From positions 62,001-126,000 of IMG/VR virus record IMGVR_UViG_3300035703_000005: 64,000 bases of DNA; one strand, given 5' to 3'. Under the pieces are notes generated by a model. The model made no database searches. It saw only the letters and a list, made by a program, of their open reading frames with translations, and was not told the DNA's origin. Below are positions 41,668-44,725 of this stretch, in pieces (position 1 is the stretch's first letter; each line of letters starts with the position of its first letter). The position numbers and the translations under genes were made by a program.

Positions 41668-41739
41668 TGGGCAATATCGGATTCGAACCAATGACCAACT
41701 GCGTGTAAAGCAGCTGCGCTACCGCTGCGCTAATCGCCC
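41668..41739 (-). tRNA. tRNA-Val(TAC)
   Basis: Cloverleaf. Confidence 0.93.
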
Positions 41740-41740
41740 G

Positions 41741-41948
41741 TGGGGGTGGTGAGATTCTGTCATACTCACAATCGGGAAGGTTACACTGACAACGTATTTC
41801 CCAACACTTAGGTTCTTCTTGGTGAGAAGTTCTATACCTTTGATTTCTCAACGATACAGCGGGCACCACCCCTAACCTATTACATTATCCCGTGAGTAAC
41901 CACAAGGATTGTTCTGTCACACCCAGAGAACTCCCGTCGAAGTTCTCA
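41741..41948 (-). ncRNA. multi-stem structured RNA, possibly the manA motif
   Basis: GGGGUGGUG/CACCACCCC closing stem, internal stems, repeated UGACAGAA, ACUCAC/GUGAGU complement. Confidence 0.55.
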
Positions 41949-42022: not shown

Positions 42023-42061
42023 AATAAGACAATTATAGAGTAGTTGAGTATAATTGTCAAG

Positions 42062-42144
42062 TGCTCCAGAGAAGATTTGAACTTCCACGCTTTTTAAGGC
42101 GGCGGATTCTAAGTCCGCTGTGTCTACCGTTCCACCACTGGAGC
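42062..42144 (-). tRNA. tRNA-Leu(TAG)
   Basis: Class II cloverleaf. Confidence 0.93.
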
Positions 42145-42262
42145 TAATTTTTAATTGATGAGTAGTGAGTGCCCACCACTCGCAGAAGACACTTTCTGCA
42201 ATTTTCACTGCATTAGAGGGCAGTGATGATATGAAAGAATCGGAAATTTCCAACCCTTCCAA

Positions 42263-42335
42263 CTCCCCCAGTCCGACTCGAACGAACAACCCCAGAGTTA
42301 ACAGCTCCGTGCTCTGCCAATTGAGCTATAGGGGA
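42263..42335 (-). tRNA. tRNA-Asn(GTT)
   Basis: Cloverleaf, U1-A72. Confidence 0.9.
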
Positions 42336-42386
42336 ATATAGGGGAAAGGAGAGCTCTTGGGCGAACCCGCAGGATCACTTTCCCAG

Positions 42387-42540: not shown

Positions 42541-42776
42541 AGGCCGCTTTTCACGGCACCGTAACACTTTCTTTACAGGGCTGTTATCACCCCGTCTCTC
42601 TATACTAGGGCAGTAGTCTTACTGCGAGAGAATGCAACAATGTTGTTTGCGTTTGTTTTTTGTCCCGTCAACAGATACAACCTTACCACCTCGTCGAAAC
42701 CTTGGCAACCCCTAGTTATGGAGTTGTGGGGAGTCGAACCCCAGTCCGAAGCAACAGACTTTGCATCCTCTTGAAC
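42541..42776 (-). ncRNA. ssrA: two-piece (circularly permuted) tmRNA
   Basis: Acceptor piece ends GGACTGGGGTTCGACTCCCCACAACTCCA at 42719; 6-nt spacer; coding piece starts GGGGTTG...GGTTTCGAC at 42712; tag ANNIVAFSRSKTTALV* at 42600-42650. Confidence 0.92.
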
Positions 42777-42783
42777 ATAGTAT

Positions 42784-42812
42784 ATAGTATACTAAAATTA
42801 TTCAGTTGTCAA
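42784..42812 (-). promoter_or_regulatory. sigma70-type promoter of the tmRNA
   Basis: TTGACA-N17-TACTAT. Confidence 0.7.
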
Positions 42813-42813
42813 G

Positions 42814-42900
42814 CGGAGAGAGAGGGATTTGAACCCTCGGTGAAGTTACCCCCACACAGACTTTCCAGGTCTGCTCCTTAAGCCACTCGGACACCTCTCC
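42814..42900 (-). tRNA. tRNA-Ser(GGA)
   Basis: Class II cloverleaf. Confidence 0.93.
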
Positions 42901-42937
42901 AACATAAACATCATACCATAATTACGGAAGATGTCAA

Positions 42938-44413: not shown

Positions 44414-44426
44414 ATATCGTAGGTGT

Positions 44427-44509
44427 ATCATTTGAGAGGATTCGAACCTCCATTGCCGCCTCCAAAACGCAAGTGCTATGGCGGAGTGTTACCGTTACAC
44501 TACAAATGA
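44427..44509 (-). ncRNA. tRNA-like RNA (Gln-like body) with a 19-nt anticodon loop
   Basis: Intact acceptor, D and T arms; CCGCC-N19-GGCGG. Confidence 0.7.
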
Positions 44510-44725
44510 TATCCTTACGTTGCTTACTCCTAGATTCTACTCATCAGATTTACTTGTTGGACCTAATCGTTGGAATACTCGCTGCGTTCAACTTATTACC
44601 CTGTCTCGACTTGAACGAGACTGTTTTCTATAGCCTTTGCGTTTGTTAGTAATAAGCATACTGACAGGTTTCTTTTACCTTTCAGTTTTCCGTTCAACCC
44701 AACTTTGGAATAAAGTTTGGGCAAG

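What the first reader, a model, noticed from the sequence alone, without database searches (positions are those of the whole stretch)
42155..42262. Adjacent hairpins with fully complementary 6-nt loops
Seen: GCAGAA-AGUGUC-UUCUGC is followed with no linker by GAGUGGUG-GGCACU-CACUACUC. The loops AGUGUC and GGCACU pair over all six positions (one G.U). Two more hairpins precede them. Inference: intramolecular kissing looks sterically difficult, so the RNA may oligomerise hand-in-hand like phi29 pRNA.
Basis: partly seen in the sequence, partly recalled or inferred. Interest (0 to 1): 0.6.

Follow-up and report, generated by a model that had tools for sequence, protein, structure and literature searches.

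The report
Cyanophage tRNA-array RNA with complementary loops
A 117-base spacer between two tRNA genes of a large freshwater cyanophage folds into four hairpins, and the last two form a two-hairpin unit, conserved in over 100 viral contigs, whose six-base loops stay complementary to each other, so the RNA probably sticks to copies of itself, though this has not been shown by experiment.

Summary
On the minus strand, which is also the tRNA strand, window 42145-42261 lies between tRNA-Asn and tRNA-Leu. It folds into four hairpins (-44.1 kcal/mol, z = -6.3). Hairpins 3 and 4 abut with no linker, and their loops AGUGUC and GGCACU pair at all six positions.

This is not chance. The two-hairpin unit occurs in phage S-SRM01 and in more than 100 IMG/VR and metagenome contigs, always inside cyanophage tRNA arrays, in at least 46 distinct sequences. 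It has no Rfam 15 match.

- **Stems:** they covary strongly. Double changes occur in 5 of 6 pairs in hairpin 3 and 7 of 8 in hairpin 4.
- **Loops:** they are nearly invariant, and 42 of 46 variants keep 6/6 pairing. A divergent clade carries AGUGCC/GGCACU, AGUGUC/GACACU and AAUGCC/GGCAUU. Two members with identical stems differ by two compensatory loop-loop changes. Statistical support is modest (p about 0.003-0.03, not corrected for phylogeny).

With 6-nt loops fully paired and no linker, pairing within one molecule is geometrically implausible. Head-to-tail self-association between molecules is therefore the best reading (about 0.5). It works like phi29 pRNA or the ROOL/GOLLD RNAs but belongs to none of those families. 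Neither expression nor oligomerisation has been shown.

The parts
42262..42336 (-). tRNA-Asn(GUU). Its 3' end abuts hairpin 1, and its 3' processing would create the 5' end of the spacer RNA.
   Evidence: ARAGORN and Rfam tRNA at 57.1 bits. Processing by RNase Z is inferred from general tRNA biology.
42232..42261 (-). Hairpin 1 (UGGAAGGGUUGGAAAUUUCCGAUUCUUUCA). A separate, optional module with the conserved core GGGUUGGAAAUNUCCGAUUC.
   Evidence: Fold. The same motif follows tRNA 3' ends in S-PM2, S-SRM01 and many IMG/VR contigs, with covarying outer stems.
42205..42226 (-). Hairpin 2 (UCACUGC-CCUCUAAU-GCAGUGA). A separate module with the conserved loop CCUCUAAY.
   Evidence: Fold. The 20-mer is identical in 68 viral loci. 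Stem variants CACCGC/GCGGUG, CGCCGU/ACGGCG and, in S-PM2, GGGGAGU/ACUCCCC keep the same loop.
42182..42199 (-). Hairpin 3: 6-bp stem GCAGAA/UUCUGC with loop AGUGUC at 42188-42193.
   Evidence: Five of its 6 stem pairs show double compensatory changes across 64 sequences. The loop is AGUGUC in 75 of the 76 family members matched by a pattern that left the loop free.
42160..42181 (-). Hairpin 4: 8-bp stem GAGUGGUG/CACUACUC with loop GGCACU at 42168-42173. It abuts hairpin 3 with no linker.
   Evidence: Seven of its 8 stem pairs show double compensatory changes. The loop is complementary to the hairpin 3 loop in 42 of 46 distinct family members.
42145..42159 (-). A/U-rich 3' tail (AUCAAUUAAAAAUUA) running up to the 5' end of tRNA-Leu. 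RNase P cleavage there would create the 3' end of the spacer RNA.
   Evidence: Sequence. In homologues the tail is only 3-5 nt before the next tRNA. Cleavage by RNase P is inferred.
42061..42144 (-). tRNA-Leu(UAG), the downstream neighbour.
   Evidence: ARAGORN and Rfam.
42784..42937 (-). Two promoter-like sites upstream on the same strand: TTGACA-16-TATGAT at 42937-42910 and TTGACA-17-TACTAT at 42812-42784. Either could drive the unit tmRNA, tRNA-Met, tRNA-Ala, tRNA-Asn, spacer RNA, tRNA-Leu.
   Evidence: Consensus scan (11/12 and 10/12 matches). These are pattern matches only, not evidence of function.

Best explanation
The 117-nt spacer is a small non-coding RNA transcribed together with the phage tRNA array. 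It would be released by the enzymes that trim the flanking tRNAs: RNase Z or 3' trimming after tRNA-Asn, and RNase P before tRNA-Leu.

Its conserved functional core is the abutting pair of hairpins 3 and 4. These probably stack base to base into a short rod of about 14 bp, with one 6-nt loop at each end. The two loops are complementary but cannot reach each other within one molecule. The hairpin 3 loop of one RNA would therefore pair with the hairpin 4 loop of another in a 6-bp kissing helix. The result would be head-to-tail dimers or longer chains or rings.

What is shown: the structure, its conservation, the stem covariation, the conserved and partly covarying loop complementarity, and the position in tRNA arrays. 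What is inferred: transcription and excision, pairing in trans rather than in cis, and any downstream role. One possible role is a nuclease-resistant RNA assembly or scaffold during infection, like the phage ROOL and GOLLD RNAs that also sit near tRNA islands.
For: - **Fold.** Four hairpins on the tRNA strand, z = -6.27, against -2.8 on the other strand.
- **Family.** The module occurs in S-SRM01 and in more than 100 IMG/VR and JGI contigs, always among same-strand tRNAs. There is a single copy in the 248,835-bp source genome.
- **Stems.** 97.9% of cells are paired and 13 of the 20 pairs of the whole structure (12 of them stem pairs) carry double changes; 0 of 500 shuffles reach this, and slid controls give 32-49% paired. 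Many G.U pairs occur on this strand only, which points to RNA rather than DNA.
- **Loops.** 98.8% of cells are paired and 42 of 46 distinct modules are 6/6.
- **Divergent clade.** It carries AGUGCC/GGCACU (7 distinct modules), AGUGUC/GACACU (2) and AAUGCC/GGCAUU (1), all perfect Watson-Crick. L264 and L237 share identical hairpin 4 stems but differ by two compensatory loop-loop swaps, G-C to A-U and U-A to C-G. Random re-pairing within that clade keeps all 10 paired with p = 0.0028; family-wide p is about 0.03.
- **No other partner.** The genome shows no excess of other hairpins displaying these hexamers: 14 against about 12 in shuffles.
- **Precedent.** Phage RNAs near tRNA islands that form homo-oligomers through kissing loops (PMC12286853), and pRNA self-association (PMC4201828).
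Against: - Loop covariation rests on few events. The AAUGCC/GGCAUU variant is a single contig (L237 and L269 are the same record).
- The tool's shuffle test for the loop helix alone is only modest (3-4 of 500) and ignores phylogeny.
- Five lineages carry a single loop mismatch: GUCACU three times, GCCACU once, AGCGUC once. Position 2 of loop 4 takes all four bases.
- One variant (L115) replaces hairpin 4 with a GAAA-tetraloop hairpin.
- There is no evidence of expression or ends. Only metatranscriptome contigs were available, and none clearly covers the module.
- The steric argument against pairing in cis is reasoning, not modelling.
- The calculated loop duplex is only -5.8 kcal/mol for this phage, and an intra-hairpin G.U closure of hairpin 4 competes.
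Confidence: 0.5

Rival explanations
1. Tertiary contact within one molecule. The two loops touch in cis, fully or through only the central 2-4 pairs, and compact the two hairpins into a pseudoknot-like or tRNA-like fold. That fold might stabilise the spacer or guide processing of the neighbouring tRNAs.
For: The conserved and covarying complementarity fits pairing in cis as well as in trans. Neighbouring hairpins that kiss in cis exist, for example the X/Y domains of enterovirus 3'UTRs and L2-L3 of purine riboswitches (from my own knowledge, not tested here).
Against: All six loop nucleotides are complementary, and the covarying pairs span four contiguous positions. The hairpins are joined by 0-1 nt and have stems of 4-6 and 7-8 bp. 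In a coaxial kissing geometry the two stem bases would be about 18-20 bp apart with no nucleotides to bridge the gap. This is inference.
Confidence: 0.15
2. The loops are independent recognition sites. Each is read by a protein, or pairs with some other host or phage RNA, and their mutual complementarity is secondary.
For: Both loops are almost invariant over more than 100 contigs while the stems drift. That pattern is typical of sequence-specific recognition. Single mismatches between the loops are tolerated in five lineages. The L115 variant keeps a hairpin 3-like loop without a complementary hairpin 4 loop.
Against: The two-position compensatory swap between L264 and L237, and the all-Watson-Crick divergent clade, are hard to explain without loop-loop pairing. 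No excess of other hairpins displaying the complementary hexamers was found in the phage genome. Host RNAs could not be examined.
Confidence: 0.2
3. The hairpins are only structured spacers. They insulate neighbouring tRNAs from misfolding or mark processing sites, and the loop sequences have no function of their own.
For: Every spacer in this array folds into some hairpin. The modules (hairpins 1 and 2, the GUCGGGAUCAUCAUAUCCGAC hairpin and others) are shuffled freely between tRNAs.
Against: Insulators need no conserved loops. Here the loops are the most conserved part, and hairpins 3 and 4 travel together in all but one variant (L115).
Confidence: 0.1
4. A signal at the DNA level. AGTGYC-N12-14-GRCACT would be an inverted-repeat operator or recombination site for a dimeric DNA-binding protein.
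For: The loops form an inverted repeat in DNA, and coordinated half-site changes would also look like covariation. Module shuffling suggests recombination in these arrays.
Against: The dominant form is asymmetric in DNA (T against C), which is a U.G pair only in RNA. The spacing between half-sites varies from 12 to 14 bp. The sequence between them shows RNA-type stem covariation, with G.U pairs on the tRNA strand only.
Confidence: 0.05

Closest known systems
phi29-family packaging RNA (pRNA, Rfam RF00044)
   Same: A phage-encoded RNA of about 120 nt carrying two loops that are complementary to each other. The loops pair between molecules ('hand in hand') to give dimers and rings (PMC4201828).
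   Different: No covariance-model match, even at E <= 10. The loops are 6 nt rather than 4. The hairpins abut instead of being arms of a three-way junction. The RNA is encoded inside a tRNA array of a T4-like cyanomyovirus, not in a phi29-like podovirus, and no link to a packaging motor is evident.
Phage T4 RNA C and RNA D (species 1 and 2 stable RNAs)
   Same: Small RNAs (139 and 119 nt) encoded on the tRNA strand of a T4-type tRNA cluster, directly next to a tRNA. Their role is unknown (PMC3014915).
   Different: No match to the hairpin 3-4 model at E <= 10. Their predicted folds differ: RNA C has a tRNA-like T-arm hairpin, and RNA D is barely more structured than shuffles. Neither has an abutting hairpin pair.
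ROOL and GOLLD RNAs
   Same: Phage and prophage RNAs of unknown function, often next to tRNA islands. They assemble into RNA-only homo-oligomers held partly by intermolecular kissing loops whose covariation is conserved (PMC12286853).
   Different: They are 400-800+ nt ornate RNAs that form closed cages, whereas this unit has a 40-nt core inside a 117-nt RNA. No Rfam hit to either family in the window. Oligomerisation is unproven here.
Fully paired 6-7-nt kissing complexes (HIV TAR-TAR*, ColE1 RNA I/II) and the synthetic dumbbell tiles built from them
   Same: A short helix with a fully complementary loop at each end. This is the architecture used to build RNA rings and fibres (from my own knowledge, not tested here).
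   Different: Those are either two different natural RNAs or engineered constructs. This would be a natural single-species tile that is complementary to itself.

Membership tests
phi29 pRNA (RF00044) | Match to the family covariance model | tested here: not met
   cmscan of the window at gathering score and of 42100-42300 at E <= 10 found no pRNA hit.
phi29 pRNA (RF00044) | Two loops complementary to each other and positioned so that they pair between molecules | tested here: inconclusive
   Complementarity is met and conserved. Pairing in trans is inferred from geometry only.
phi29 pRNA (RF00044) | Three-way-junction architecture, in a phi29-like phage with a pRNA-dependent packaging motor | tested here: not met
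   The fold is four serial hairpins with no junction. The genome is a 249-kb T4-like cyanomyovirus with a tRNA array.
T4 RNA C / RNA D | Location on the tRNA strand within a T4-type tRNA cluster, next to a tRNA | tested here: met
T4 RNA C / RNA D | Sequence or structure homology to T4 rnaC or rnaD | tested here: not met
   Model R1 finds nothing in the T4 tRNA region at E <= 10, and the folds differ.
ROOL / GOLLD | Match to the Rfam models; large ornate multi-domain fold | tested here: not met
   No hit in the window. The element is 117 nt.
ROOL / GOLLD | RNA-only homo-oligomer | not testable with these tools
   Needs native gels, mass photometry or cryo-EM.
tRNA or tRNA-like element | Cloverleaf or T-arm recognised by ARAGORN or Rfam | tested here: not met
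   No tRNA call between 42145 and 42261.

The most novel reading that the evidence does not exclude
A natural minimal RNA tile that assembles with itself. A 40-nt unit of two abutting hairpins, cut out of a phage tRNA precursor, would polymerise head to tail through 6-bp kissing loops into dimers, rings or filaments inside infected cyanobacteria. It would be a small, sequence-simple counterpart of the ROOL and GOLLD cages, and an RNA quaternary structure conserved across a whole group of freshwater cyanomyoviruses.
Probability: 0.3. Interest if true: 0.85.

Novelty: new variant of a known kind. Interest (0 to 1): 0.62.

Why it matters
Natural RNAs that assemble with copies of themselves are rare. 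The known examples are phi29 pRNA, retroviral dimerisation sites and, recently, the ROOL, GOLLD and OLE RNAs.

This motif is small enough (a 40-nt core) to be tested in a day on a native gel, and compensatory loop mutants are easy to design. It sits in the same genomic niche, phage tRNA islands, as ROOL and GOLLD, whose function is still unknown. A minimal relative by analogy could make the question of why phages place self-assembling RNAs next to their tRNAs open to experiment.

It also adds an uncatalogued family to the set of cyanophage non-coding RNAs: it has no Rfam 15 match. Cyanophage tRNA arrays also turn out to be mosaics of several conserved hairpin modules.

Tried and rejected
- **Rfam.** All 4227 families at gathering score, and at E <= 10 on the spacer. 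Only weak chance hits appeared (Plastid-petD at 20 bits against a gathering score of 65; snoR79).
- **Expression.** One search for runs and one read-laying run. Only Logan contigs of three metatranscriptomes were available. The pieces that matched were mostly tRNA-like fragments from relatives, and nothing clearly covers 42145-42261. Expression and RNA ends therefore remain unknown.
- **Bacterial and archaeal genomes.** A scan for the main-clade hairpin 3-4 pattern gave 0 hits, so there is no sign of a host origin or a prophage copy.
- **T4 rnaC and rnaD.** Not homologous.
- **A third partner in the phage genome.** Hairpins displaying AGUGUC, GGCACU or their complements are no more frequent than in shuffles.
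- **Alternative secondary structure.** Pairing AGUGUC with GGCACU as an ordinary stem would destroy both covarying hairpins. I rejected it on the covariation.
- **Earlier descriptions.** Searches for cyanophage plus kissing, and for the loop hexamers, found nothing relevant. A catalogue of 10,006 unnamed candidate viral RNAs from IMG/VR (PMC10690425) could contain this motif, but its supplementary tables are not held, so this could not be checked.
- **Further loop variants.** Two more viral scans with free loops found only known combinations.
- **Not used.** Protein tools, and the complex predictor, which handles proteins only.

Full report
**Context.** The window is part of a 248,835-bp IMG/VR virus record (window = C1:62001-126000). 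It is a large T4-like cyanomyovirus. It carries manA, wcaG and PhotoRC-II RNAs, a permuted cyanobacterial-type tmRNA and 28 tRNA genes, all on the minus strand. Its closest cultured relatives by DNA are Synechococcus phages. K-mers of the tRNA array occur mainly in lake and other freshwater metagenomes. The finding lies in the 117-nt spacer 42145-42261, between tRNA-Asn(GUU) at 42262-42336 and tRNA-Leu(UAG) at 42061-42144.

**Checking the observation.** RNAfold returns four hairpins as both the minimum-energy and the centroid structure:
- hairpin 1 at 42232-42261;
- hairpin 2 at 42205-42226;
- hairpin 3 at 42182-42199, GCAGAA-AGUGUC-UUCUGC;
- hairpin 4 at 42160-42181, GAGUGGUG-GGCACU-CACUACUC.

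The energy is -44.1 kcal/mol against -23.2 +/- 3.3 for shuffles (z = -6.27), while the plus strand gives z = -2.8. Hairpins 3 and 4 abut with no linker, and their loops pair at all six positions with one U.G. No Rfam 15 family matches the spacer, even at E <= 10.

**Relatives.**
- BLAST against cultured phages found the hairpin 2-4 region only in the freshwater phage S-SRM01, also downstream of tRNA-Asn. There the stems of hairpins 3 and 4 differ by compensatory changes and both loops are unchanged.
- An exact scan for the hairpin 2 20-mer gave 68 IMG/VR loci.
- Scans anchored on hairpin 1, and on another hairpin (GUCGGGAUCAUCAUAUCCGAC) that is absent from this window, gave many more. These include a divergent clade in which hairpin 3 is only ACCA/UGGU.
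- One metagenome scan added further members.

In every case the element sits among tRNA genes of the same strand, with different tRNA neighbours, and usually ends 3-5 nt before the next tRNA. Hairpins 1 and 2 and the other hairpins are independent modules that come and go. Hairpins 3 and 4 occur with or without them but stay together in all but one variant (L115).

**Covariation in the stems.** On 64 distinct sequences, 97.9% of cells in the proposed structure are paired, against 86.6% in shuffles (0 of 500 reach the observed value) and 32-49% when partners are slid. Double compensatory changes occur in 5 of 6 pairs of hairpin 3 and 7 of 8 pairs of hairpin 4. G.U pairs are frequent on this strand, for example 30 of 64 at one hairpin 4 position. 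They would be A.C mismatches on the other strand, so the selected structure is an RNA in the tRNA sense.

**The loops.** They are the most conserved part. Loop 3 is AGUGUC in 75 of the 76 family members matched by a pattern that left the loop free.

Among 46 distinct modules from 107 contigs, the loop pairs are distributed as follows:

| Loop 3 / loop 4 | Distinct modules | Pairing |
|---|---|---|
| AGUGUC/GGCACU | 25 | 6/6 |
| AGUGUC/GACACU | 9 | 6/6 |
| AGUGCC/GGCACU | 6 | 6/6 |
| AGUGUC/GACAUU | 1 | 6/6 |
| AAUGCC/GGCAUU | 1 | 6/6 |
| AGUGUC/GUCACU | 2 | 5/6 |
| AGUGUC/GCCACU | 1 | 5/6 |
| AGCGUC/GGCACU | 1 | 5/6 |

The informative cases are in the divergent clade. All 10 of its distinct members are perfectly Watson-Crick, with three different loop pairs. 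L264 (AGUGUC/GACACU) and L237 (AAUGCC/GGCAUU) have identical hairpin 4 stems yet differ by two compensatory swaps in the loop-loop helix, G-C to A-U and U-A to C-G.

The statistics are modest:
- For the loop helix alone, 98.8% of cells are paired against 98.2 +/- 0.2% in shuffles (4 of 500 reach it), and the covariation score is 0.087 against 0.071 (3 of 500).
- Random re-pairing keeps all 10 divergent-clade modules paired with p = 0.0028.
- Family-wide, 42 of 46 fully paired modules is reached in 3% of shuffles.

None of these tests corrects for shared ancestry, and the A-U variant comes from a single contig. Position 2 of loop 4 is loosely constrained: G, A, U and C all occur there. My conclusion is that loop-loop pairing is likely but not proven by sequence alone.

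**Pairing in cis or in trans.** This step is inference. In known complexes where 6-7-nt loops pair completely (TAR-TAR*, ColE1 RNA I/II; from my own knowledge), the loop-loop helix stacks between the two stems. The stem bases then lie at opposite ends of a quasi-continuous helix, here 4-6 + 6 + 7-8 bp. In this RNA those two bases are joined by 0-1 nt, so they cannot be that far apart.

The covarying pairs span four contiguous loop positions. That is more than the two or so pairs used by side-by-side contacts in cis such as L2-L3 of purine riboswitches. Pairing between molecules is therefore the simplest reading. Hairpins 3 and 4 would stack base to base into a rod with a sticky loop at each end, and this could form head-to-tail chains or closed dimers or rings. 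Nearest-neighbour energy for the loop duplex is -5.8 kcal/mol here and -8.5 for the all-G-C variant. Real kissing complexes are usually more stable than this estimate. An extra G.U closure of hairpin 4 predicted by RNAfold would compete.

**Making the RNA.** Consensus promoter-like sites lie upstream on the same strand, at 42937-42910 (11/12 matches) and 42812-42784 (10/12). A perfect TTGACA-17-TATAAT follows tRNA-Leu at 42060-42032. The spacer would therefore be transcribed together with the tmRNA and tRNA-Met, -Ala, -Asn and -Leu, and released by tRNA end processing. I could not confirm this. Only contigs of three metatranscriptomes were available, and they do not clearly cover the module.

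**Comparison with known systems.**
- *phi29 pRNA.* The logic is the same: two mutually complementary loops on one RNA that pair in trans (PMC4201828). This RNA is not a member, because it has no model match, no three-way junction and a different phage type and locus.
- *T4 RNA C and RNA D.* The genomic niche is the same: small RNAs in the tRNA cluster with unknown roles (PMC3014915). Neither matches the hairpin 3-4 model or fold.
- *ROOL and GOLLD.* These may be the most telling parallel. They are phage RNAs of unknown function, often near tRNA islands, that form RNA-only homo-oligomers held partly by conserved intermolecular kissing loops (PMC12286853). They are an order of magnitude larger and unrelated in sequence.

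No bacterial or archaeal genome holds the main-clade pattern. The phage genome holds one copy, and other hairpins showing the complementary hexamers are no more frequent than in shuffles.

**Rivals.** The alternatives are a compact fold through contact in cis, loops as independent protein or RNA recognition sites, plain spacer hairpins, and a DNA-level inverted-repeat site. The independent-sites idea explains the near-invariance of the loops and the tolerated mismatches, but not the coordinated double swaps. The DNA idea fails on the dominant U.G form (asymmetric in DNA), on the variable half-site spacing, and on the RNA-type covariation of the sequence in between.

**Verdict.** A catalogue of 10,006 unnamed candidate viral RNAs (PMC10690425) could not be checked for this motif.

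Noticed in passing
window 42232-42261 (-); L002 1497-1526; many loci: Hairpin 1 (core GGGUUGGAAAUNUCCGAUUC, covarying outer stem) is a conserved module of its own. It sits directly after the 3' end of a tRNA in freshwater contigs and in marine S-PM2. Its DNA also resembles a promoter (TTGGAA-16-TATCAT, 9/12), whose start site would fall at hairpin 2.
   Followed up: partly
It is usually followed by 'ACC' or 'ACU' and a tRNA, or by further hairpin modules (CCUAAGUUUUCUUAGG, CGGGGACUUGAUCACCCCCG). It looks like another uncatalogued motif of cyanophage tRNA arrays. No Rfam hit was found in five test loci.
   Followed up: partly
L054 1462-1591: In one contig, hairpin 2 (stem plus loop) appears inverted relative to hairpins 3 and 4 and tRNA-Asn, so the RNA would carry the reverse-complement loop AUUAGAGG. 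This is either an inversion across the stem's inverted repeat or an assembly artefact.
   Followed up: no
L115 about 8384 on the minus strand, and L115:3708-3754: One contig has two related units. One is a canonical hairpin 3-4 pair. The other has a longer hairpin with loop GCGUGUC followed by a GAAA-tetraloop hairpin in place of hairpin 4. That orphan loop could still pair with the GGCACU loop of the other unit.
   Followed up: no
window 42543-42808 (-): A phage-encoded permuted (two-piece, cyanobacterial-type) tmRNA sits inside the tRNA array (Rfam cyano_tmRNA at 105.8 bits). ARAGORN predicts the tag peptide ANNIVAFSRSKTTALV.
   Followed up: no
window 42032-42060 (-), also 42910-42937 and 42784-42812 (-): A perfect TTGACA-17-TATAAT consensus promoter lies between tRNA-Leu and tRNA-Gly, and further near-consensus promoters lie between other tRNAs. 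The array appears to be split into several short transcription units. Similar 'CTTGACA...TCTTATAAT' spacers occur in homologous contigs.
   Followed up: partly
window 44425-44510 (-): ARAGORN calls a tRNA of undetermined identity with a two-base 'anticodon' (gc). Rfam scores it as a tRNA at 49.2 bits. It may be an unusual or degenerate tRNA.
   Followed up: no
window 41739-41946 (-): A full-length manA RNA (109 bits) is embedded in the tRNA array between tRNA-Gly and tRNA-Val, on the tRNA strand. It is not upstream of a protein-coding gene.
   Followed up: no
L010 about 265-370; L075, L092, L116 and others: In many contigs hairpin 4 is followed by an element of about 110 nt bounded by GUAGGUG...CACCUAC (GUAGGUGCCAAAACC...GGUAAAGU...CACCUACC). 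ARAGORN does not call the element itself as a tRNA, though in L010 it calls a tRNA-Leu (369-441) at the element's 3' end, and no Rfam family matches. It is a candidate further structured RNA. A tRNA-like fragment (GGUUCUGGGUGGAAUUCCCAG...GUAGGUUCGAUACCUAC) also follows hairpin 1 in many loci.
   Followed up: partly
window 42226-42235 (run X1): The best DNA run, possibly the source sample, holds a high-depth contig variant that skips 8 bases in the linker between hairpins 1 and 2. This suggests co-occurring strain variants that differ in module spacing.
   Followed up: no
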